A stretch of 64,000 nt of DNA from IMG/VR virus record IMGVR_UViG_3300042465_005589, positions 1-64,000 of that record, one strand, 5' to 3'. Below the pieces are notes generated by a model, which saw only the letters and a list, made by a program, of their open reading frames with translations, was not told the origin of the DNA and ran no database searches. The position numbers were made by a program, and so were the translations under genes. Positions 36,432 to 64,000 of the stretch are shown here, in pieces (positions within the stretch are counted from its first letter, which is position 1; each line of letters begins with the position of its first letter).

Positions 36432-37421
36432 TTAAAACATATCTTCTAATTTATCTAAATGTTTTCTAACAATATCCAAATCACTTATATCAGTATAGGT
36501 CATTCCTTGTTTTTTTAACATTTTAACATGGTTATGTAATTGTGTCATCATTTGTCTAATCATTCCGGACATTGTTGGGTAATTTTCAATCATCTTATCT
36601 AAAAAATAAACTTGTTCAGGTAAGTTTAGAACATTACCAATTTTTTTAACCCATTCTTTTCCATATTTATCAGCATCCATTTCCATATCCCAATAAATTT
36701 TGTAAAACTCCTCAAAGTCTTCAATATCTCCCATGTAAGAATCTTTCAAATTAAATTCCGACATTTGTTGTTCATGTTTCAATTCGTGAAATAAAACATA
36801 TACAAATGATGCAAAATTTGAGAATGACTCAGGTGAACATATAATAATCGCCTTACTTGTTCGAACTCCTTGAAATCCTGTGTTACAGGCATTCAATACT
36901 TTTATTGTATACCCCCTATCTTGAACATAATCTTTTATTTTACTAACGATTAAATCAAACGCTTTATATTTGTCTTCAGGAATGTCTTTTCTAAATTTAT
37001 CAATAACCCTTTCATAATTTGAGGTAGTTTTTAGACCGTTTGGGATGATATCTTCTAAAATCGTATCTTTGGTTATCTCAAACCATTCCGTTACAATAGG
37101 GACTATCTTTTTCTTCCCACCGGGTGTTTGATTTAACACACCGCCTTCTTCATCATTGTCTTCAGGATGTTTTTTCACATATTTAGAAATTTTTCTAGAC
37201 TCTTTTTCTATTTTTGCAATTTTATTCTTTGGTGTACTCATTTTACCATCATAACTATCAAACGCTAATTCTGCACTATCATACTTTGATGTTGGAACAA
37301 TAAAGGGTTGTAATTGCTCTTTATTGAAAAGCCTAACACCAGGACTCATCGGAACTCTAAATGAACCCGAACCACCAGTACCTGTAGCTTCTTTAATTTG
37401 TTTTTTGTTATTTTTATCCAT
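36432..37421 (-). CDS. putative zinc metallopeptidase-like (HExxH) protein
   Basis: YVLFHELKHEQQ...EMDAD; start moved to MDKNN (37421) because the late motif occupies 37428-37434. Confidence 0.6.
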   Translation of the reverse strand: MDKNNKKQIKEATGTGGSGSFRVPMSPGVRLFNKEQLQPFIVPTSKYDSAELAFDSYDGKMSTPKNKIAKIEKESRKISKYVKKHPEDNDEEGGVLNQTPGGKKKIVPIVTEWFEITKDTILEDIIPNGLKTTSNYERVIDKFRKDIPEDKYKAFDLIVSKIKDYVQDRGYTIKVLNACNTGFQGVRTSKAIIICSPESFSNFASFVYVLFHELKHEQQMSEFNLKDSYMGDIEDFEEFYKIYWDMEMDADKYGKEWVKKIGNVLNLPEQVYFLDKMIENYPTMSGMIRQMMTQLHNHVKMLKKQGMTYTDISDLDIVRKHLDKLEDMF

Positions 37422-37449: not shown

Positions 37450-37683
37450 ATGGAACAACAACAACAAGAACTATTCGGAAAATTATTTAATACTATCCCA
37501 TTATATAATGAAGACCATTTAGACGTACTACTATCAACAATGGATAAAGAACAATCAATCTATATTCTAACTCAAGCCGTTAGTTTTGCATTTCACTCAG
37601 GCGTGTTTTCATTGGGGGAATCAGAAATTATTTCAAAATCAATAAGAACATTAAATAAAATTGAAAAAAATGTTGTGGGATAA
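37450..37683 (+). CDS. hypothetical protein
   Basis: 77-aa ORF. Confidence 0.6.
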   Translation: MEQQQQELFGKLFNTIPLYNEDHLDVLLSTMDKEQSIYILTQAVSFAFHSGVFSLGESEIISKSIRTLNKIEKNVVG

Positions 37684-37695
37684 ATAATTTATATT

Positions 37696-37703
37696 TACAT
37701 TTG
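37696..37703 (+). promoter_or_regulatory. Bacteroidota sigma-A -7 element
   Basis: TACATTTG upstream of 37724. Confidence 0.6.
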
Positions 37704-37723
37704 TAAAATAAAATACAAACACT

Positions 37724-37996
37724 ATGAAAAAAATATTCTTATCACTTTTACTTATTGTAAGTCTATCCTCATTCTCTCAAGATAACCCAAAACCAAAAAA
37801 CATTGATAAAGGTATCAATGTTTTGTTAGATTCGTTATCCAATGTTTATCGTGTTAAAGTAGGTGCGGTCATTGTTAATGATTACCCAAACTTAAGAACA
37901 ACAACAATCGTTTATGTTAAAAATGGTGAATTAGTTAAAAAAATTATTAAAACTGAAAAAAATCCACCAAAACGAGATATATTAAGTAAAAATTAA
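37724..37996 (+). CDS. small secreted protein (Sec/SPase I)
   Basis: MKKIFLSLLLIVSLSSFS|Q signal peptide with Gln+1. Confidence 0.75.
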   Translation: MKKIFLSLLLIVSLSSFSQDNPKPKNIDKGINVLLDSLSNVYRVKVGAVIVNDYPNLRTTTIVYVKNGELVKKIIKTEKNPPKRDILSKN

Positions 37997-39150
37997 ATTG
38001 TTTTATTACACAGTGCGGTAACACTATATCCGGTTTTAATTGTATCAGTACCAATTGGTGAATAAACTCTAACAATTGATTCTCCTGATGAACTATTGAA
38101 ATTTATTTTAATAGGTGCCTCTCCTATTGTATAAATAACAAATTCTTTAACACCTTTATTACAAAGTTTTTGAAGGTCTTTTAAAGCATATTCTACTTCA
38201 ATTCCACCTCTTTTAAATGTTTTTGATTTGGATGGGTCAACTAAAAGTTGTTCCAATAACTCTTGATAATTATTTGCTGTTATTTTTACAAGTTTATCAC
38301 CACTAACTGACACATTATTTCTTGAATTTATAAGAGTTAATTGATAAACATATAATGGGACCCATTTAAAATCAACATATTTATGTGGTCTAGTCGTCAC
38401 ATAACCAGTGTCTTGAATCACCTCTTCCCCCTTATTAAGAACAACTAATCTATCGGGAATGGTTCCGGTATCAAAAGTTACAACACCATTACCATATAAT
38501 TTTTCATTAGTTAATACATAATTAAGACTTGCATCTCCTTGACCCGCCTCAATTTTTACACCAACCCAATTACAAATATCTTTGGAATCTTTATCTTTAA
38601 CTTCCCCCGTTCCTTTAATATCGAAATTAACAAACTGTTCTTGTTTGTATAATTTAATTTTTTCAGGGTTTTTATTATCACCTTTAGTCTTATCATACGG
38701 AGTTTTACCTAATGTAACTTGATTAACATCTGTTGGAACTTGGATAGTTAAAACACCATTCTTGATTAAATCAGGAAATATCTCCTGAAAATATTTTTTA
38801 ACCGAATTTGCTCTTGCCAATGCCAAACTTCCCTTTGTCTCATATCCTTTAGGATTCGTCACATTTGATTCTCCAGATGTTATATTAACTATAAATGTCT
38901 TACCACCATTGTCTTTAATAAATTTTTCAATCTGAGGTTTTAATGCGATAATATCGTTTTTAACGGTTGGGGAATCAATCTGACCAAACCCAAATTTATC
39001 TCCAATACTTTGTATTGGGAATTCTGTGTTAATCAACGATTGTTTTGTAGAAACTTGTTCCAGGTTTAAATATTGTCGTTTTGTCGCGCCTTCGTGAAGA
39101 TTCATTATTCTATTTCTTTCCTCACTAGATATCTCAAATAAATTATTCAT
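37993..39150 (-). CDS. late protein with degenerate OmpA-C-like domain
   Basis: start MNNLFEISSEERNRIMNLHE; FGFGQ...IVNITSGESNVTN...SLALARANSVKKYF; late motif 39165-39171. Confidence 0.6.
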   Translation of the reverse strand: MNNLFEISSEERNRIMNLHEGATKRQYLNLEQVSTKQSLINTEFPIQSIGDKFGFGQIDSPTVKNDIIALKPQIEKFIKDNGGKTFIVNITSGESNVTNPKGYETKGSLALARANSVKKYFQEIFPDLIKNGVLTIQVPTDVNQVTLGKTPYDKTKGDNKNPEKIKLYKQEQFVNFDIKGTGEVKDKDSKDICNWVGVKIEAGQGDASLNYVLTNEKLYGNGVVTFDTGTIPDRLVVLNKGEEVIQDTGYVTTRPHKYVDFKWVPLYVYQLTLINSRNNVSVSGDKLVKITANNYQELLEQLLVDPSKSKTFKRGGIEVEYALKDLQKLCNKGVKEFVIYTIGEAPIKINFNSSSGESIVRVYSPIGTDTIKTGYSVTALCNKTI

Positions 39151-39205
39151 ATTTTTCTTTTTATATAAATACATTATTATTTATTTAAACTTAATATTTG
39201 TGCAT

Positions 39206-39233
39206 AAAAAAAAGGGACATATAGTCCCTTTTT
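39206..39233 (-). terminator. intrinsic terminator after major capsid gene
   Basis: aaaaaaaagggac-atata-gtccctttttt. Confidence 0.85.
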
Positions 39234-39255: not shown

Positions 39256-41112
39256 TTATCTCAATTCTCTTAAATCGAATGTTCTAACACCATCTACAGT
39301 AATTCTTCCGTAAAATCTGTTGTTCACCATTTTTTTCGCGTAACGAGTCATTATACCTTTAATCGGTGTAAAGTTGAATGGGTTGTACATTGTTGGTGTT
39401 AATTGTAATGGTACATACGGTGCGTAGATGTATCCTGTGTCTAACAATGATGTTCCTTTGTGTCCAATTAACACTTGGTTAGCTGGGAAGTAAGGGTCAC
39501 GGTAAACTTGGTAACGTCCTGCTAATGTTCCAACTCTTTCAATACCCATGTTATATTGGTCTTGTTCAGGAGAAGCATTAGATACGTGGAAGTACTCTAA
39601 ATCATCAAAGATAGCAGAAACCTCAGAAGATACAACAATCCAGTTTGCTCCACCTCTTAAAGTAGATTTGTGGATTTGTGCAGACAATTGGTTAATTGCT
39701 GTAATTAATGTTTGGTTCCAATCTTTTTGAGTGTAAGAAGTTACTTGAGAAATTCTTCTCCAACCATTGTAATCCCATCTCAAGTTCCATGCAGCACCTT
39801 TACGTAAATCTCTTAAGATTTCACGGTCAATTTCTGCCGCAACTTGCTCAGATAATAAAGCTGTTAATTCAGCTTCAGCATCGATGTTGTGGAAAGCTGC
39901 AACGTCTTGAGCTAACTCAGGAGACCATTGTGCTCTTAATTTTCTTTCTGTAACTGATACAGTAACTGAATCTAAATCGAAAGAAACCTCACCGATTTTA
40001 TCTTCAAATTCTAATTCTTCATAACGTCTGAAAACAGCTTTAAATGAAGTTGTTGCTAATGCTTCAGAAATAGTTGTACCTGTGTAACCATCTAACGATG
40101 AAGAATCACAATCAGCACATACTGGACAAGATAAATCAACTTCTAACCAAATACAACCATCAACGTCACATACATTTTTGAATGAACCACCGTTACCAGT
40201 AGATGCAAATGTTGTTTGAGTTGTGTTACCATATTTCACAATACCTCTACCATAGATTTGAGTTACAACTCTAAATAATAAAGCTCCTGTAGATACAGCA
40301 CATGGTGAACTAGCGTCAACTGTTAAACCAGCTCCTGTATAGATAATTAAATCAGATAAGAATGATTCAGTATCCATTTCGTTACCATCAGGTCCGATTA
40401 ATTTTCCTGCACCTGTGTCAGCAAAACCACACATTTTAATGATAACTTTTCTTGTGTTACCTGAAGCAATTACTGCTGCTCCATCAGTTGTTCCTGAAAT
40501 AACTGCATCAACTAAAACTCCACCTGTCCATTTTTGGATAGTTGTTGTTGCTGTGATAGCTGACCAACGACCTTTAGAATAATCAAATAATCCTGGTGGG
40601 TCTAAACTTGGTTCGTTACCTTCATAGAATAAATCATAAAGATTTTTTTCATATACTGGGTTGTTTGAGCCTGAACCTGCTGTGTAACCTTCACTTGGAG
40701 AACCTGGATAATTTCCTGGAGACCCGATTGGTGCGTAGTGCTCACCTGAATACTGACCGTCAATACCGTCTTTGTATCCTTGAATTTTTGGTACAAAATA
40801 GAATAATTTACCGATTGGTAAGTTCATTGCTTGTACAGAAACGATATCATTCGCTAATAATTTAGAGAATACTCTTCTTACGATAGGAAATACAACAGTT
40901 TCAAATGAACCTGAAGACCCGTCAGAAGTTGCTTCGTTTATTAAGAAAGACGCTTGGTTCTCATATAATTGAGCTACGTTTTCTCTTAAGTGACCTTTAA
41001 GACCTTCAAGAAATCCTAATTTGTCCCATTTGTTGATTGTGTCTTCTTTAATAACTTTAAGGTGTTTTAACCCGATGTTACCAACTAGACCTGATTCTAA
41101 TAATGCTCCCAT
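39256..41112 (-). CDS. major capsid protein (T4 gp23-like)
   Basis: VSVQAMNLPIGKLFY, RKLRAQWSPELAQD..AFHNIDAEAEL, EIDREI, YAPYVPL, FTPIKGIMTRY. Confidence 0.96.
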   Translation of the reverse strand: MGALLESGLVGNIGLKHLKVIKEDTINKWDKLGFLEGLKGHLRENVAQLYENQASFLINEATSDGSSGSFETVVFPIVRRVFSKLLANDIVSVQAMNLPIGKLFYFVPKIQGYKDGIDGQYSGEHYAPIGSPGNYPGSPSEGYTAGSGSNNPVYEKNLYDLFYEGNEPSLDPPGLFDYSKGRWSAITATTTIQKWTGGVLVDAVISGTTDGAAVIASGNTRKVIIKMCGFADTGAGKLIGPDGNEMDTESFLSDLIIYTGAGLTVDASSPCAVSTGALLFRVVTQIYGRGIVKYGNTTQTTFASTGNGGSFKNVCDVDGCIWLEVDLSCPVCADCDSSSLDGYTGTTISEALATTSFKAVFRRYEELEFEDKIGEVSFDLDSVTVSVTERKLRAQWSPELAQDVAAFHNIDAEAELTALLSEQVAAEIDREILRDLRKGAAWNLRWDYNGWRRISQVTSYTQKDWNQTLITAINQLSAQIHKSTLRGGANWIVVSSEVSAIFDDLEYFHVSNASPEQDQYNMGIERVGTLAGRYQVYRDPYFPANQVLIGHKGTSLLDTGYIYAPYVPLQLTPTMYNPFNFTPIKGIMTRYAKKMVNNRFYGRITVDGVRTFDLRELR

Positions 41113-43089: not shown

Positions 43090-43815
43090 TTAATGACCTA
43101 AATAATCGTTTAATTTTTTCATTAAGTCAAGTGATTTATTACCTGAATTACCAACATGTCTTTCAACACTCATTCTTTTCTCTTCATCTAAGTTTTCATC
43201 ATACAAACTTTTATCCTCTTTATTTAAAAATAGGTATGCTCCCGGTGTTGAAGGTGAAGACACTAAGTCAAAACAAATTAATTCAAAATCATCTTGTACT
43301 TCGTTTTGGTCACCAATTTTTTTAAGTGACCCAACACCCCTTGATGATATACCTAAAGTAACTCCTTGTCTTAAGTAATTTGCAGCTAAATCTCCTTTAG
43401 TTGAACAGATACCTCTTTCATGGTAACCCGGTGATGTCAATAATTTAATCTTTCCCATTAAGACGTTACCTTCCCACCATACTTCAGTGATTGCATGAGA
43501 AACTCTATCTAAATCAATTAGTGATGATTCCGGGTGATTTAACTCTGATAGAGCAGTACCCTTTTTAATCATTTTTTTATAATTCTCAGATTCTCTTTTT
43601 AATATACGTTCAGGGTATAATCTACCATTTCTATTTGGGGTGTCATATTTTTGTAATACGGCATAAAATTCAAATGGTTTTGAGTGGTCCAACATCTCGC
43701 TAGATTCTCTAATTAAAGTTTCGTTACGATTATCCTTTGGGTTAATATAACCCGCATCGTATTCAACTAATATACCTTTTCCTGATTCATTCGGTTGTAA
43801 TATTTTTAAACTCAT
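43090..43815 (-). CDS. prohead protease (T4 gp21-like)
   Basis: NRNGRLYP, ELNHP, VSH, GISSRGVGS, FDLVSSPSTPGA. Confidence 0.93.
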   Translation of the reverse strand: MSLKILQPNESGKGILVEYDAGYINPKDNRNETLIRESSEMLDHSKPFEFYAVLQKYDTPNRNGRLYPERILKRESENYKKMIKKGTALSELNHPESSLIDLDRVSHAITEVWWEGNVLMGKIKLLTSPGYHERGICSTKGDLAANYLRQGVTLGISSRGVGSLKKIGDQNEVQDDFELICFDLVSSPSTPGAYLFLNKEDKSLYDENLDEEKRMSVERHVGNSGNKSLDLMKKLNDYLGH

Positions 43816-52098: not shown

Positions 52099-52498
52099 AT
52101 ACAACTTTTTTTTCAAATTCTAAAACGATATCTCGTTCATATAATTTATTTTTTACTGATTCTTCTGTTTCTCCAAACGAGAAAACTAGTCTAGTTTGTC
52201 TATCAAAATCAACATCATCACTTTCATTTTCATACCCTAAGGCTATTATACCATCCATAGAATCAATCATTGAAAAATAATCAGAGTTTTGAATTACTGA
52301 CATGGTTACCATATCATTCTTCAAAACTCCTACTTTTTTTATGTGTTCTAAATCAGGTGGGAGAGGATATCTATTGGACGGTTTTGAGTCCCAGTTTTCC
52401 CCCCAAATGTTTTCCGAACTATCTGAGAAAATAAATTCATATATGTTATCTCCTTTATAGTTTGGACCTAATTCATTAACATATATTAAATAACTCAT
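52088..52498 (-). CDS. hypothetical protein
   Basis: 136-aa coupled ORF. Confidence 0.65.
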   Translation of the reverse strand: MSYLIYVNELGPNYKGDNIYEFIFSDSSENIWGENWDSKPSNRYPLPPDLEHIKKVGVLKNDMVTMSVIQNSDYFSMIDSMDGIIALGYENESDDVDFDRQTRLVFSFGETEESVKNKLYERDIVLEFEKKVVYEH

Positions 52499-53808
52499 AG
52501 TACTTCACCTTTAGTGTTTACTCTAAGTTGTTTATTATTCATTTCAAATACCAAATTATTTTTATTTGTTTTACCAACTAATTTTGCGTTTGGATATTTT
52601 ATTACTAATTTAGTAGAAGCGACTTCTTGAGAAATACTTTCAGAAATTTGTTTGATTTTAGAAATTTTATTTTTTCTTTCTTCTTTAATCAAATTAGTTT
52701 TTTGTGTTTTATTTTCTAATAATTGTTTTTCTTTTTGGTCAATTTTAAAATAACCTCTTAATACTTCATCAACTTTTGATTCTGTAAACATACCTTCAAA
52801 CATATCTTCTAAATGATTTGCGTGGTCGTCTTTCATTGTGTGAGGATTTAATCTTCTATGTCTTGGGTGAGAAGGTAATTCATCTTCTTCAAAATCAAGT
52901 TCAAAGTCATTATCCATAAACCCTTCAGCCATTTCAGGTTCTACATCCATATCTGCTTGGATATCTTCAACTTCAGTATCATCGGTAAAATCTTCACCAT
53001 CCATATCATCTTCTTGACCAAATTCATTAGCTTCATCTTCTTCAAATTTATTCATGATTTCCTCTTTATCTTCTTCATCTAAAGATTCTAAATCTAACGC
53101 TGATAAGATTGAGTTTATAACGTATTTAACATCTTTAGATGTCATTGGTTCGTCTTCTTGAGCATCTTCAAAGGCTCTTAATTTTTGAGCCAATTTACCT
53201 GTTAGTTTTTGGATTACTTTTAAAGTAACAATTTCATCATCTTCAGGTTCCATTTCATCGTCACCTAAATCAATTTCTTCTTCGTCATCAATATCAAATT
53301 CATCTTCAGGTGCCGGAGCTGGAGCAGGTGCCGGAGCAGGTGCCGGAGCTGGAGCAGGTGCCGGAGCAGGAGCAGGTGCCGGAGCCGGTGCAGATTGTTC
53401 ATCAGTTTCCCCACCTTTCATTTTTAAGATATATTTTGTTGCGTCGTTTTCGTAAAATAAATTAACATTGGTTTCTTGACCTTCGTTAACATTAACTTCT
53501 TTTGCGATTAAATTAAGTCTTTTAAAAGCTTGAGAATAAGAAGAATAATATTTTCTATTTTTCATTGGCTCTAAATAATCTACTTCACCAGCAGATTCTG
53601 TTAAACTTCTTTTAATAACATAACCATTTTTTTCTTTGATAATTTGATAATTTCTACCATCAGCTAATGTTTTAGTATAATCAACTGAAGTACTCTCATT
53701 TATCGGTGTAGGTTTGTTTTCATTATATTTTGCGATTTCCATGATACGTTGAATCTTCTCCATACCTTGTAATTTTTCGCTACCAATCGGTCTTAAATTA
53801 TTTCCCAT
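52495..53808 (-). CDS. acidic protein with (Ala-Pro)n linker, probable core/internal head protein
   Basis: IQRIMEIAKYNE leader, (AP)n tract of about 14 units, D/E tracts, late motif 53839-53845. Confidence 0.65.
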   Translation of the reverse strand: MGNNLRPIGSEKLQGMEKIQRIMEIAKYNENKPTPINESTSVDYTKTLADGRNYQIIKEKNGYVIKRSLTESAGEVDYLEPMKNRKYYSSYSQAFKRLNLIAKEVNVNEGQETNVNLFYENDATKYILKMKGGETDEQSAPAPAPAPAPAPAPAPAPAPAPAPAPAPEDEFDIDDEEEIDLGDDEMEPEDDEIVTLKVIQKLTGKLAQKLRAFEDAQEDEPMTSKDVKYVINSILSALDLESLDEEDKEEIMNKFEEDEANEFGQEDDMDGEDFTDDTEVEDIQADMDVEPEMAEGFMDNDFELDFEEDELPSHPRHRRLNPHTMKDDHANHLEDMFEGMFTESKVDEVLRGYFKIDQKEKQLLENKTQKTNLIKEERKNKISKIKQISESISQEVASTKLVIKYPNAKLVGKTNKNNLVFEMNNKQLRVNTKGEVL

Positions 53809-53949: not shown

Positions 53950-53957
53950 TATTTTTG
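53950..53957 (+). promoter_or_regulatory. Bacteroidota sigma-A -7 element
   Basis: TATTTTTG upstream of 53984. Confidence 0.5.
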
Positions 53958-53983
53958 TATCAAACATTAAAACATTTACTGAT

Positions 53984-54367
53984 ATGAAAAAACTAATCAC
54001 CATCATCCTTTTTATTTTTATCTCAAATTTATCCTTCTCCCAAATAAAAAGGGCGGGTAGTTTTTATGAATTAACTGATTTATGGAAAAAAGATTCTGTA
54101 TCGGTTAAACAATTAATTACCAAGTTTGATTTAAATATTACCAAATTAGATACGGTACAATTCTTTAAACAATTTAACTTAAATAAAGATTTACACACTA
54201 ATTACTCATACGAATGTTATGTGTATAAATTAGATAAGAAGACTAACACTATTTCAATGAAAGAATATTTTCGTCAAAGTCTAAAACCAAAATTAAACAA
54301 ATATGTTATGATTTTCTGTTTTGATAATGATAATGGTGAAAAAATAATTAACATCAAAATATTTTAA
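53984..54367 (+). CDS. small secreted protein (Sec/SPase I)
   Basis: MKKLITIILFIFISNLSFS|Q signal peptide with Gln+1. Confidence 0.75.
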   Translation: MKKLITIILFIFISNLSFSQIKRAGSFYELTDLWKKDSVSVKQLITKFDLNITKLDTVQFFKQFNLNKDLHTNYSYECYVYKLDKKTNTISMKEYFRQSLKPKLNKYVMIFCFDNDNGEKIINIKIF

Positions 54368-54401
54368 AAAAAAAGGGGTCTCGTTAAAGACCCTTTTTTT
54401 T
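54366..54401. terminator. bidirectional intrinsic terminator
   Basis: A tract-ggggtct...agaccc-T tract between convergent genes. Confidence 0.8.
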
Positions 54402-55419
54402 ATTTCATTATTGTTGGAAGTTTAATTATTAATCTTCGATTAGGTGCGGTTTCATTTTGATTTGTTACCTCCGGGAATTTTTTACCGGGTGCGAATTGGT
54501 CTGTTTCACCAATACCTTTAGGAATAAAATTTAACTTAATTCCTGGTAAACTAGATTTAAGAGTTGTTGCAATTTTCTGAGCTCTTTTTTTAGATAAATC
54601 CATATCATAATCTTTTCTTTTTTGACCTGATGCAACTTTACCTTCAGGGTTTCCATCTATAGATGATGAACAAATTACCTCAACATCTCCTTGAACATTA
54701 GAATAATTTGATTTAATAGATTGTACAAAATCATTAAATTCTTTTTGAGCCTCATTTGTTAGTTCAACACTATCAAAATTAAAAGGGCTTGTTATGTTTA
54801 ATTCAAATGGTTTGTCTACCGGTACTTCTTCCGGTTTATTTGAATTAAATGATGTATTGTATTGACCAGGATAGAAATTTATAAGATATGCTTTTCCTCG
54901 ACTTCTATAATATGTTTTAGCTGAGATTATACCATCTTTTGATTCTTGATATCTAGAGTTATTTTTAAAATAATCCCCCGGAAATTCTTGAATACTCGCA
55001 CCATAAACTATTGGAACACCAATAGGTGATTTTTTAGAAGGGGCATCTTGAGGTACTACAGCTATAAACGCAAAATCAAGATTTTTAGTTTGAATAGGTG
55101 CCGCATTAGAATTTACAATTCCTTGCCAATTTTCTGTGGTAAGTTCAATATTAGTTCTAAAATTTTCATCTACAACTTCTTGAGTTTTAACATTATATTT
55201 AAAATCGTATAAATTACCATTTAATGGTTGAGTCGGTTTAACTTCCCCATCTTCATCTACAGATACTTCATATAATTCCCCATCGATTATTTTAATATTA
55301 ATTCCAGTCGCTCCAATACTATAATAAGAGTTATCATCAGAACTATTTTGTTCACTCATAACTCTTTTAACAATTTTATAAAATTCAGACTCAGTTAGTC
55401 TAATAATTTTTTTTCCCAT
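54400..55419 (-). CDS. OmpA-C-like domain protein with putative capsid-targeting leader
   Basis: leader MGKKIIRLTESEFYKIVKRVMSEQ; FNFDSVEL...DLSKKRAQ...KGIGET...NRRLII. Confidence 0.8.
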   Translation of the reverse strand: MGKKIIRLTESEFYKIVKRVMSEQNSSDDNSYYSIGATGINIKIIDGELYEVSVDEDGEVKPTQPLNGNLYDFKYNVKTQEVVDENFRTNIELTTENWQGIVNSNAAPIQTKNLDFAFIAVVPQDAPSKKSPIGVPIVYGASIQEFPGDYFKNNSRYQESKDGIISAKTYYRSRGKAYLINFYPGQYNTSFNSNKPEEVPVDKPFELNITSPFNFDSVELTNEAQKEFNDFVQSIKSNYSNVQGDVEVICSSSIDGNPEGKVASGQKRKDYDMDLSKKRAQKIATTLKSSLPGIKLNFIPKGIGETDQFAPGKKFPEVTNQNETAPNRRLIIKLPTIMK

Positions 55420-61225: not shown

Positions 61226-61619
61226 GGGAGTGACACGGAATTGACTATTCGTAATAGTTATTCGGGGCACGTAGTGAGATGTTCTCTATCACTTAAATCT
61301 ATGGGTACAACAATTTAGACGGAAACGTTTTAAACAAAATGGCTCTAGTAGGTCTTGTACGTCAAGATGAGCTTGTGAACGTAGCGTAAGCAAACACACA
61401 TTGGGGTCGGTGGACATATAACCCAGCAACAGGAGTCCTTAAAAAGGTGTGGTACCTATCCGAAAAGGTACAAGTGGAGGATTAGTTCTCAGTAAACCGA
61501 ACCACTCTAAAAATAAGGGAATTGTGAAATTTTGGATTGTTAGCTTAAACAATATCCTAAACGTGTAGTCCTTAATAGGTAATACAAGTAACACCGGAGT
61601 TCGAGTCTCCGCACTTCCA
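61226..61619 (+). ncRNA. ssrA: tmRNA
   Basis: 5' GGGAGTG pairs with 3' CACTTCC (G3-U alanine determinant), discriminator A; GGAATTGAC D-loop analogue; T-arm CGGAG-TTCGAGT-CTCCG; tag ORF 61321-61389; smpB nearby; CCA not encoded. Confidence 0.93.
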
Positions 61620-61626
61620 CAAAAAG

Positions 61627-63794: not shown

Positions 63795-64000
63795 TTAATA
63801 CGATGAGAATACTCGTCTTATTGAGAATCTTCGGAAGGATTATTGTTTCCCTTCTTTTCCACCATCTTTTGAATGGTAATCCTCATTGCCGATTGGTTAG
63901 ACCAATCACTCCTTAAGATATCATTTACTCTCTCATTATTCAACTCTCTTTAACCTTGCGAGCTAACTCCGGATTCGACTCCGTAGAGGTTTTTGGCGAG
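63795..64000 (-). ncRNA. 3' part of a large structured RNA, possibly GOLLD-like (continues beyond window)
   Basis: GC-richer non-coding stretch with serial hairpins (63834-63854, 63861-63877, 63891-63907), CUCGCAAGG GNRA loop, two UUCUCA motifs, ends at a terminator; family assignment from memory only. Confidence 0.5.

What the first reader, a model, noticed from the sequence alone, without database searches (positions are those of the whole stretch)
37696..39171. Convergent pair 1: host-promoter secreted mini-protein facing a late OmpA-like protein
Seen: a plus-strand 90-aa protein with SPase I signal (SFS|Q) under a TACATTTG promoter overlaps tail-to-tail with a minus-strand gene that has the late motif, a short amphipathic leader ending in LHE/LEQ, an OmpA-C-like domain and no signal peptide. 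The same layout recurs at 53950-55419. Known: OmpA-C domains bind peptidoglycan in the periplasm. Inference: with no signal peptide, the OmpA protein could reach the periplasm by being packaged in the head and ejected at infection, while the early periplasmic partner could neutralise the incoming cognate protein. That would be an effector-immunity-like superinfection-exclusion system.
Basis: inference. Interest (0 to 1): 0.8.

Follow-up and report, generated by a model that had tools for sequence, protein, structure and literature searches.

The report
Phage wall-binding protein plus secreted partner
A giant T4-like phage of Bacteroidota carries swappable two-gene cassettes, a late cell-wall-binding protein with a shared N-terminal tag facing an early small secreted protein, which probably let infected cells block rival or sibling phages, though this is untested.

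Summary
At 37724-39150 a 90-aa signal-peptide gene behind a Bacteroidota-type promoter overlaps tail-to-tail by 4 nt with a late-motif gene. That gene encodes a 385-aa protein: a conserved 32-aa leader, a divergent OmpA-like fold (seen by Foldseek, not by Pfam) and a confidently modelled C-terminal domain with no PDB match. A second pair lies at 53950-55419.

The window belongs to an uncultured T4-like jumbo phage of about 318 kb. These are the only two of 67 genes with a signal-peptide call.

In relatives the pairing is kept across 30 cassettes. They form 8 large-protein clusters and 11 small-protein clusters, and each small cluster goes with one large cluster. The pairing also holds in 6 of 7 distant genomic contexts. 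The leader is modular: unrelated cargoes share it, and the window's second protein carries a different one. Both leaders end in [L/I/M]-x-E, like the capsid protein's T4-type protease site.

Best reading (about 0.4): a polymorphic, Spackle-like exclusion module. The large protein is delivered by the virion and acts in the periplasm. The small protein is made early and neutralises it or blocks its target. Packaging, binding and exclusion are all inferred. Rivals are a lysis-associated module, shared-target blocking as in T5 Llp, and mere synteny. I class it as a new variant of a known kind, interest about 0.7.

The parts
37696..37703 (+). Bacteroidota-type -7 promoter box TACATTTG (TAnnTTTG) of the small gene; a near -33 element GTTG lies at about 37672-37675
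   Evidence: Sequence and pattern search. The same -33 TTTG / -7 TAnnTTTG arrangement precedes 25-27 of 29 distinct small partner genes in relatives.
37724..37996 (+). Small partner 1: 90-aa secreted protein. Signal peptide is about residues 1-19, predicted cleavage SFS|Q. No Cys, so not a lipoprotein.
   Evidence: ORF list. No Pfam or PHROG hit. Only close metagenomic homologues. One of only two signal-peptide calls among 67 genes.
37993..39150 (-). Large partner 1: 385-aa late protein (the ORF extends to 39174; the likely start is the ATG at 39150)
   Evidence: ORF list. Start supported by relatives. 312 close homologues, all metagenomic and unnamed. 635 representative clusters found by profile search.
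39055..39150 (-). Leader A (residues 1-32), pattern ..I..EE.NRI.NLHE.ATK..YL..EQ, then a variable Q/T/S-rich linker
   Evidence: Invariant residues E11 R14 I15 N17 H19 E20 A22 T23 Y27 L28. It is the only region shared with the pair-2 family in a profile-profile comparison. It is found on at least 8 different cargo clusters.
38605..39033 (-). Divergent OmpA-like (peptidoglycan-binding type) domain, residues about 40-182
   Evidence: AF2 model. Foldseek PDB top 50 are all OmpA-C/OprF/RmpM/MotB/TagL-type domains, best E 3.7e-5. Distant family members reach 26-27 bits on Pfam OmpA.
37996..38595 (-). C-terminal 'type 1' cargo domain, residues 186-385, with a conserved Cys pair and invariant IPDR and D(T/S)GY motifs
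   Evidence: Alignment A3. AF2 pLDDT 90, pTM 0.88. No significant PDB fold match, best E 0.04.
39164..39171 (-). Late-gene motif TATTTATA, 13 nt upstream of the ATG at 39150
   Evidence: Pattern search. The same motif sits 10-25 nt upstream of many structural genes in the window and of 28 of 29 leader-tagged genes in relatives.
39206..39233 (.). GC-stem hairpin with flanking A and T runs between the capsid gene and large gene 1 (terminator-like)
   Evidence: Read from the sequence. Hairpins with different sequences occupy the same place in relatives. It was not called by the rule-based scan.
39256..41112 (-). T4-type major capsid protein (context). Its N-terminal ...SFLINE|ATS lines up with T4 gp23 ...SFLTE|AE.
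   Evidence: Pfam Gp23 2.6e-74. BLASTP to T4 gp23.
43090..43815 (-). gp21-type prohead protease (context; candidate processing enzyme for the leaders)
   Evidence: PHROG head maturation protease 1e-42. 36% identity to T4 gp21, E 5e-23.
53950..53957 (+). -7 promoter box TATTTTTG of small gene 2
   Evidence: Conserved in the L051 relative.
53984..54367 (+). Small partner 2: 127-aa secreted protein (signal peptide ending SFS|Q, two Cys in the mature part)
   Evidence: Homologues of 129 aa accompany the large partner in both genomic positions.
54368..54401 (.). Bidirectional intrinsic terminator between the convergent genes of pair 2
   Evidence: Terminator scan finds it on both strands.
54400..55419 (-). 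Large partner 2: 339 aa. Leader B is residues 1-24 (55348-55419), followed by a variable N-domain and a C-terminal OmpA-like domain (about 54403-54783).
   Evidence: Pfam OmpA 2.3e-5, 25.1 bits, below the 27.2 cut-off. 10 of 13 family members hit OmpA, best 5e-7. Orthologues carry leader A instead.

Best explanation
The two pairs are copies of a polymorphic two-gene envelope module of T4-like jumbo phages that infect Bacteroidota.

The large gene is transcribed late. Its protein has three parts: a short conserved N-terminal leader, a divergent OmpA-like peptidoglycan-binding domain, and an exchangeable cargo domain.

I infer that the leader works like the T4 capsid targeting sequence. It would take the protein into the prohead core and then be cut off by the gp21-type protease at its [L/I/M]-x-E site. 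The mature protein would leave with the DNA and act in the periplasm of the next host, docked on peptidoglycan.

The small gene has a host-type promoter and is therefore made early. It is exported by Sec into the periplasm of the already infected cell. There it would neutralise incoming copies of the cognate large protein, as T4 Spackle neutralises the gp5 lysozyme. This would give superinfection exclusion and resistance to lysis from without.

Shown: gene anatomy, promoter classes, folds, leader modularity, and conserved, co-varying pairing.
Inferred: packaging, cleavage, ejection, binding and exclusion.
For: - Pairing: only 2 of 67 window genes have a signal-peptide call, and they are the two partners.
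- The pairing is kept in relatives at 96-47% identity.
- Nearly every leader-tagged gene downstream of the capsid gene is followed by a convergent small signal-peptide or lipoprotein gene.
- 30 pairs fall into 8 large and 11 small clusters, and each small cluster goes with one large cluster.
- In type 1, the C-terminal domain and the small protein diverge together (r = 0.83) and are inherited as a block distinct from leader plus OmpA.
- 6 of 7 distant contexts keep an adjacent secreted small gene.
- Pair 2 moved as a unit and swapped its leader.
- Timing: host-type -33/-7 promoters precede the small genes; late motifs, preceded by a terminator, precede the large genes.
- Periplasmic action: OmpA-like fold; Cys pair kept or lost together; signal-like segment in distant homologues.
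- Packaging: the leader is the only region shared by unrelated cargoes. It has an invariant [L/M/I]-H-E. The capsid protein has a T4-like I-x-E|A site. A gp21 homologue is encoded.
- Literature: T4 internal proteins are diverse apart from a conserved capsid targeting sequence (PMC3012670). Spackle is an early periplasmic inhibitor of virion gp5 (PMC7677548).
Against: - There is no evidence that the large proteins are in virions.
- Adjacency to the capsid gene may only reflect a plastic region.
- Residues after the proposed cleavage site (ATK..YL) are as conserved as those before it, unlike a simple propeptide.
- [L/I/M]-x-E tripeptides are common by chance.
- Leader A is not amphipathic.
- In T4, internal proteins are thought to enter the cytoplasm, not the periplasm.
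- Distant homologues with a signal-like segment have the small gene co-directional, so both proteins would meet in the same cell. One of these lies beside an endolysin.
- Small partners of distant type-1 proteins are not detectably related to the window's.
- Co-divergence of the C-terminal domain and the small gene is also expected from physical adjacency alone.
- The cargo domain has no recognisable enzymatic fold.
Confidence: 0.4

Rival explanations
1. Lysis-associated envelope module. The large peptidoglycan-binding protein acts in the producing cell at or before lysis. It would reach the wall through holin lesions like a canonical endolysin, or by its own membrane or signal segment in relatives. 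The small periplasmic protein would be its partner or regulator, as an antiholin, spanin partner or inhibitor would be.
For: - Distant homologues have an N-terminal extension followed by a basic, hydrophobic, AxA-like segment.
- In L108 the gene directly follows a PG_binding_1 + Muramidase endolysin and faces a small signal-peptide gene.
- In L056, L106 and L109 the two genes are co-directional.
- Expression is late and there is no signal peptide, as for cytoplasmic endolysins.
- Some small partners are lipoproteins, as o-spanins are.
Against: - The window's large proteins have no transmembrane segment.
- Most small partners lack a lipobox.
- Lysis genes are not usually hypervariable cassettes present in two copies per genome.
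- A leader shared with unrelated cargo has no role in this model.
- No hydrolase or other lysis fold was detected.
- Early expression of the partner from a host promoter on the opposite strand is unusual for spanins.
Confidence: 0.2
2. Shared-target exclusion, as with T5 pb5 and Llp. The large protein, delivered by the virion, uses a variable host envelope component during entry. The small early protein blocks that same host component rather than the phage protein. Co-variation would arise because both track the same host target.
For: - The layout matches T5, where the small exclusion lipoprotein gene lies adjacent and downstream of the receptor-binding protein gene (PMC9586334).
- Some small partners are lipoproteins (L060, L074, L079).
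- Small partners differ completely between distant homologues whose large C-terminal domain is conserved. This is easier to explain if they bind host proteins.
Against: - The large proteins do not look like receptor-binding tail proteins: OmpA-like fold, capsid-side gene position, leader.
- No host target is identifiable.
- The window's small proteins are not lipoproteins.
Confidence: 0.15
3. No functional coupling. The region downstream of the capsid gene is a plastic region that collects late accessory genes and early secreted 'moron' genes. The pairing would be inherited synteny.
For: - T4-like genomes have hyperplastic regions between core modules (general knowledge).
- Most surveyed loci come from one phage clade with the same neighbourhood.
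- Co-divergence can follow from adjacency alone.
Against: - Pairing persists where the neighbours are entirely different: thymidylate synthase, endolysin, Band_7.
- Pair 2 is found as a unit at two positions.
- At least 11 unrelated small-protein clusters all encode exported proteins.
- No other gene in the 64-kb window has a signal-peptide call.
Confidence: 0.1
4. The large proteins are injected anti-defence internal proteins, as T4 IPI* is, and act in the cytoplasm. The small secreted proteins have an unrelated role.
For: - Leader modularity and hypervariable cargo resemble the T-even internal-protein loci (PMC3012670).
Against: - An OmpA-like peptidoglycan-binding fold and a conserved probable disulfide point to the periplasm rather than the cytoplasm.
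- This does not explain the tightly linked secreted partner.
Confidence: 0.07

Closest known systems
T4 Spackle (Sp) and the gp5 tail lysozyme
   Same: - A small protein with a signal peptide, made early, sits in the periplasm of the infected cell.
- Its proposed target is a wall-directed protein brought in by a superinfecting virion (PMC7677548).
   Different: - No sequence or family match to Spackle or gp5.
- The proposed target has a peptidoglycan-binding fold but no recognisable hydrolase.
- Here the genes are adjacent, convergent and polymorphic, whereas sp and gene 5 are unlinked in T4 (general knowledge).
- Binding is untested.
T4 internal proteins (IPI-III, Alt) with the capsid targeting sequence
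   Same: - A short conserved N-terminal leader on otherwise unrelated, rapidly varying proteins.
- The leader ends in a [L/I/M]-x-E motif of the kind cut by the gp21 protease.
- A gp21 homologue and a T4-like capsid cleavage site are present (PMC3012670).
   Different: - The leader is about 30 residues, not about 10, and is unrelated in sequence to the T4 Alt N-terminus that I read.
- Conservation continues past the putative cut site.
- The cargo looks periplasmic, not cytoplasmic.
- Each gene has a cognate secreted partner, which T4 internal-protein genes lack.
- Packaging is untested.
T5 Llp / Cor exclusion lipoproteins next to receptor-binding protein genes
   Same: - A small exported exclusion-type gene lies directly beside a late virion-type gene and changes with it (PMC9586334).
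- Some relatives' partners are lipoproteins.
   Different: - The window's partners are not lipoproteins.
- The large protein is not a tail receptor-binding protein by any test here.
Polymorphic toxin-immunity cassettes and T6SS wall-targeting effectors with periplasmic immunity proteins
   Same: - A conserved N-terminal trafficking region, an exchangeable domain, and a small cognate gene immediately beyond the 3' end.
- The partner is exported to the periplasm.
- Many sequence types map one-to-one.
   Different: - Encoded by a lytic phage.
- The partner is convergent and under a separate early promoter.
- No known toxin domain was detected.
- No orphan immunity genes were seen in this window.
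OmpA_C-like / MotB-like peptidoglycan-binding domains (PF00691)
   Same: - Fold match for protein 1.
- Near-threshold Pfam match and canonical-looking D...LSxxRA...NRR motifs for protein 2.
   Different: - No signal peptide or membrane anchor.
- Protein 1 is below Pfam detection and lacks the terminal NRR motif.
- Peptidoglycan binding is untested.

Membership tests
OmpA_C-like peptidoglycan-binding domain (PF00691) | Beta-alpha-beta-alpha-beta-beta fold of the OmpA C-terminal domain | tested here: met
   Protein 1: AF2 model plus Foldseek. The top 50 PDB hits are all OmpA-C/OprF/RmpM/MotB/TagL-type domains, best E 3.7e-5, TM to target 0.5-0.6. Protein 2 was not modelled.
OmpA_C-like peptidoglycan-binding domain (PF00691) | Score at or above the Pfam gathering threshold (27.2 bits) | tested here: not met
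   Protein 1: no hit. Protein 2: 25.1 bits. 10 of 13 pair-2 relatives hit at E <= 0.01, best 5e-7. Distant pair-1 relatives score 20-27 bits.
OmpA_C-like peptidoglycan-binding domain (PF00691) | Conserved Asp and Arg that contact the peptidoglycan stem peptide | tested here: inconclusive
   By inspection of the alignments, protein 2 keeps ..SIDG.. and ..LSKKRA.. (R invariant). Protein 1 keeps an invariant Arg in ..ARANSV.., but the acidic position is GES(N/Q)V and cannot be assigned without a residue-level structural alignment.
OmpA_C-like peptidoglycan-binding domain (PF00691) | Binds peptidoglycan | not testable with these tools
   Needs a pull-down with purified sacculi.
T4-type internal head proteins with a capsid targeting sequence | The same short N-terminal leader on otherwise unrelated proteins of one phage lineage | tested here: met
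   Leader A is the only region aligned between the two families (hhalign probability 98.9). It occurs on 8 cargo clusters. Leader B replaces it on the window's protein 2.
T4-type internal head proteins with a capsid targeting sequence | Leader ends at a gp21-protease site (L/I-x-E), and the phage encodes that protease | tested here: inconclusive
   The motif is present and invariant ([L/M/I]-H-E). A gp21 homologue is present, and the capsid protein has an aligned I-x-E|A site. Cleavage itself is not testable, and the motif is short.
T4-type internal head proteins with a capsid targeting sequence | Sequence similarity to the T4 leader | tested here: not met
   No resemblance to the T4 Alt N-terminus read from the T4 record. 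The IPI-III leaders were not fetched.
T4-type internal head proteins with a capsid targeting sequence | Protein present inside mature heads and ejected at infection | not testable with these tools
   No cultured relative. The closest cultured capsid protein is 40% identical (Flavobacterium phage immuto).
Spackle-type periplasmic superinfection-exclusion inhibitor | Small protein with a Sec signal peptide, expressed early | tested here: met
   The signal sequence was read from the translation and passes a crude hydrophobicity rule. A host-type promoter is conserved in relatives. Expression timing is inferred from promoter class only.
Spackle-type periplasmic superinfection-exclusion inhibitor | Homology to Spackle, or binding to a virion wall-directed protein | tested here: not met
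   No Pfam or PHROG family matches either small protein. Binding is not testable here.
Llp/Cor-type exclusion lipoproteins | Lipobox Cys at the signal-peptide cleavage site | tested here: not met
   The window's small proteins end SFS|Q with no Cys there. Three relatives' partners do have ..SSC/..CSC/..TSC.
Polymorphic toxin-immunity cassettes | Conserved N-terminal region, variable C-terminal domain, and a cognate small gene next to the variable end | tested here: met
   Pair-1 family: leader plus OmpA shared, at least 4 different C-terminal regions, each with its own small partner. In the pair-2 family the variable part is N-terminal instead.
Polymorphic toxin-immunity cassettes | Recognisable toxin domain or toxicity | tested here: not met
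   No Pfam or PHROG domain. The C-terminal domain has no PDB fold match. Toxicity is not testable here.
Two-component spanins / holin-antiholin pairs | Membrane-spanning segment in the large partner, and an outer-membrane lipoprotein or SAR-type small partner | tested here: not met
   Neither window large protein has a hydrophobic segment, and the small partners are not lipoproteins. Distant homologues do carry a signal-like segment, and one lies next to an endolysin.

The most novel reading that the evidence does not exclude
T4-like jumbo phages of Bacteroidota carry a hypervariable arsenal for phage-against-phage conflict. A universal leader loads interchangeable, peptidoglycan-docking effector proteins into the capsid. 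These are fired into the periplasm of the next cell. Each effector comes with its own early-expressed periplasmic immunity protein, so an infected cell is protected from kin and exposed to non-kin. This would be a virion-delivered counterpart of bacterial polymorphic effector-immunity systems.
Probability: 0.25. Interest if true: 0.85.

Novelty: new variant of a known kind. Interest (0 to 1): 0.7.

Why it matters
Superinfection exclusion in T4-like phages is known from a few unlinked genes in coliphages. Here a large uncultured freshwater phage lineage shows a modular, rapidly diversifying cassette with three parts: a shared leader, a wall-binding domain with a swappable cargo domain, and a private secreted partner.

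If the module works as proposed, it would:
- show that phages run effector-immunity style polymorphism among themselves;
- give a natural capsid-loading tag for Bacteroidota phages;
- assign a role to hundreds of 'hypothetical' phage protein clusters (635 representatives);
- add a confidently predicted protein domain with no counterpart among solved structures.

Even if the mechanism turns out to be lysis-related, the conserved pairing is a solid and testable genetic unit.

Tried and rejected
- Nucleotide and protein searches of both large proteins against cultured phage genomes found nothing.
- Sequence searches of the PDB gave only a spurious dienelactone hydrolase hit.
- BLASTP between the two large proteins, and between the two small proteins, showed no similarity. 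So 'the same layout' means shared architecture, not duplication.
- hhalign of the two families aligned only the leader.
- I looked for further leader-tagged genes in the window and found none.
- I looked for orphan copies of any small-partner cluster in the window and found none.
- Raw counts of the promoter motifs are not above shuffles, so I rely on position and conservation instead.
- The weak Pfam hits RexA (protein 1) and Tis1 immunity protein (small protein 2) are far below threshold, and I discard them.
- The two DTG-like motifs in the C-terminal domain suggested an aspartic protease. The first Asp is not conserved and the spacing is wrong, so I rejected this.
- HMMs of each small-protein cluster found no convincing link to the partners in distant contexts.
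- Searches with P0153 and P0146 in viral contigs returned nothing or one locus.
- The genome collection held a single 2.5-kb contig, in a MAG labelled 'uncultured Bacteroides sp.'.
- Literature searches found no description of this module.
- Co-folding of the pair was not possible with the tools.
Full report
**What the window is.**
- The region lies in the late structural block of an uncultured T4-like jumbo phage.
- The neighbours are a Gp23-type major capsid protein at 39256-41112 (Pfam 2.6e-74), a gp21-type prohead protease, the portal and the large terminase.
- Identical DNA occurs in IMG/VR contigs up to 318 kb.
- No cultured phage matches at nucleotide level. The nearest cultured capsid proteins are about 40% identical, from Flavobacterium phage immuto and a Microcystis phage.
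- Several things point to a Bacteroidota host, which is inferred: GC near 30%, Bacteroidota-type promoters, a phage-encoded protein with a T9SS-like C-terminal tail in a related locus, and a MAG label.

**Checking the observation.**
- The small gene is a 90-aa ORF at 37724-37996 with an MKK / hydrophobic / SFS|Q signal sequence and no cysteine.
- TACATTTG lies at 37696-37703.
- The convergent stop codons overlap by 4 nt.
- The minus-strand gene has TATTTATA at 39164-39171. Its N-terminus contains NLHE and NLEQ and has no hydrophobic stretch.
- The real start is probably the ATG at 39150, giving 385 aa, because 96%-identical relatives start there.
- 'OmpA-like' cannot be confirmed by sequence profiles for this protein. 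An AlphaFold2 model built on 18 homologues (pLDDT 79) matches only OmpA-C, OprF, RmpM, MotB and TagL peptidoglycan-binding domains in the PDB (best E 3.7e-5). The best BFVD hit is an uncharacterised 'OmpA-like domain-containing protein' of an uncultured phage.

Pair 2 (53950-55419) has the same logic with differences.
- A bidirectional terminator separates the genes.
- The OmpA-like domain is C-terminal. It scores just under the Pfam cut-off, 25.1 against 27.2 bits, while 10 of 13 relatives hit at up to 5e-7.
- The leader is a different one.
- The gene seems to be co-transcribed with upstream late genes.

Two qualifications apply.
- The promoter motifs are not over-represented in this AT-rich window.
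- Leader A is not amphipathic by hydrophobic moment.

**Is it more than chance?**
- With one crude signal-peptide rule, only 2 of 67 genes in the window are called, and they are the two partners of the two OmpA-like genes.
- The promoter assignments gain weight from relatives. Of 29 distinct cassettes, 25 have a TAnnTTTG box 8-45 nt before the small gene's ATG, usually with a TTTG about 20 nt upstream; two more have it at 5 nt.
- In 28 of 29 cassettes the large gene has a TATTTAT-type motif within 40 nt of its ATG (mostly 4-18 nt), usually just after a GC hairpin that ends the capsid transcript.
- The same late motif precedes many structural genes in the window.

**Linkage and co-variation.**
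- Relatives at 96, 66, 60 and 47% identity keep the convergent secreted partner.
- In several relatives both pairs lie in tandem directly after the capsid gene. In the window, pair 2 sits 15 kb away, still with its partner, and has exchanged leader A for leader B.
- A search seeded with a distant member recovered many loci that match only the leader. In almost all of these, a leader-tagged gene follows the capsid gene and faces a small signal-peptide or lipoprotein gene, often with overlapping stops.
- Clustering 30 pairs gives 8 large-protein clusters and 11 small-protein clusters. Every small cluster goes with a single large cluster.
- Large clusters share the leader and often the OmpA-like region, but differ in the rest.
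- Within type 1, the C-terminal domain and the mature small protein diverge at the same rate (means about 45% identity). They correlate at r = 0.83 and behave as a block separate from leader plus OmpA. Physical adjacency alone could also produce this.
- A profile search of 1.84 billion representatives finds 635 clusters with mixed architectures.
- Seven distant members were inspected in their contigs. Six have an adjacent small secreted gene. It is convergent in three (L054, L108, L110) and co-directional in three (L056, L106, L109). The neighbours are as different as thymidylate synthase, a Band_7 protein and an endolysin.
- The family is essentially absent from 185,579 species genomes.

**Anatomy of the large protein.**
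- Leader A, residues 1-32, has ten invariant positions, including [L/M/I]-H-E and ATK..YL.
- A variable Q/T/S-rich linker follows.
- Next comes the OmpA-like domain, with an invariant Arg in ARANSV.
- The C-terminal domain of about 200 residues models very confidently on its own (pLDDT 90, pTM 0.88) but has no significant PDB match (best E 0.04).
- That domain has invariant G..G....IPDR, D(T/S)GY, P.YV..LT and VYSP.G motifs. It also has a cysteine at each end. The two are kept together, or both lost in P0210, which suggests a disulfide.
- Other family members replace this domain with cysteine-rich or other domains.
- Some distant members replace the leader with a 50-60-residue extension, followed by a basic, hydrophobic, AxA-like segment that looks like an internal signal sequence.

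**Mechanism.** The data establish a two-gene module. One product is exported early. The other is a late, leader-tagged, wall-binding-type protein that most likely acts outside the cytoplasm.

How a protein without a signal peptide gets there is the open step. I favour virion delivery for these reasons.
- The leader behaves like the T4 capsid targeting sequence, which is the only conserved part of the otherwise diverse T-even internal proteins (PMC3012670).
- Both leaders end in [L/I/M]-x-E.
- The phage's capsid protein keeps a site that lines up with T4 gp23's SFLTE|A.
- The neighbouring 335-aa protein carries the same I-x-E|AT..GSGSF motif at its N-terminus.
- A gp21 homologue is encoded.

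An early periplasmic protein aimed at an incoming virion protein is what T4 Spackle does to gp5 (PMC7677548).

The polymorphism resembles toxin-immunity cassettes. The layout resembles T5 pb5-Llp (PMC9586334).

None of packaging, cleavage, ejection into the periplasm, binding or exclusion is shown, so I put this reading at about 0.4.

**Rivals.**
- A lysis-related role (0.2) is kept alive by the endolysin-adjacent, signal-segment-bearing relatives.
- Shared-target blocking (0.15) would explain why small partners of distant homologues are unrelated.
- Pure synteny (0.1) is hard to reconcile with the distant contexts.
- A cytoplasmic anti-defence role (0.07) does not fit the fold or the partner.

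**Novelty.** No paper in the searchable library describes this module. Database names are 'hypothetical' or 'OmpA-like domain-containing'. I class it as a new variant of known kinds: Spackle-type exclusion, leader-tagged head cargo, and polymorphic effector-immunity pairs.

Noticed in passing
window 63800-64000 (-): The 3' half of a GOLLD RNA (Rfam RF02032, 163.6 bits, above the gathering score), cut off by the end of the window.
   Followed up: no
window 61226-61622 (+): A full-length tmRNA gene (Rfam RF00023, 65.7 bits) encoded by the phage. ARAGORN did not call it.
   Followed up: no
window 1 to about 2800 (-): A stretch at about 50% GC in a genome at about 30% GC. It is the start of an ORF of more than 933 aa that runs off the window. 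The ORF is made almost entirely of Gly-Thr-Ser-type triplets (collagen-like Gly-X-Y repeats) after a short N-terminal domain. It is probably a fibre protein.
   Followed up: partly
window 36432-37421 (-): A 329/335-aa late protein whose N-terminus (..KQIKE|ATGTGGSGSF) copies the capsid protein's putative maturation site (..FLINE|ATSDGSSGSF). It also contains an HExxH motif (HELKH), with a weak DUF6782 metallopeptidase hit. It may be a processed head protein.
   Followed up: partly
L056:5308-7032 (+): A related phage contig encodes a 574-aa protein with a signal peptide and a C-terminal tail resembling a T9SS sorting domain, directly after the OmpA-like gene. I judged this by eye only.
   Followed up: no
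L054:4125-4598 (-): A 157-aa protein in a related contig starts with a leader-B-like sequence (..IVKLNENDLSRIINKVLAEQ) but has no secreted neighbour. Leader B is therefore used beyond the OmpA-like cassettes.
   Followed up: no
window 52495-53808 (-): A very acidic 437-aa late protein with a perfect (Pro-Ala)n run. Its N-terminus (..EKIQRIMEIAKYNE) faintly recalls leader A. No family match.
   Followed up: no
L108:1046-1828 (+): An endolysin (PG_binding_1 + Muramidase) lies immediately upstream of a distant homologue of the large protein that carries a signal-like segment.
   Followed up: partly
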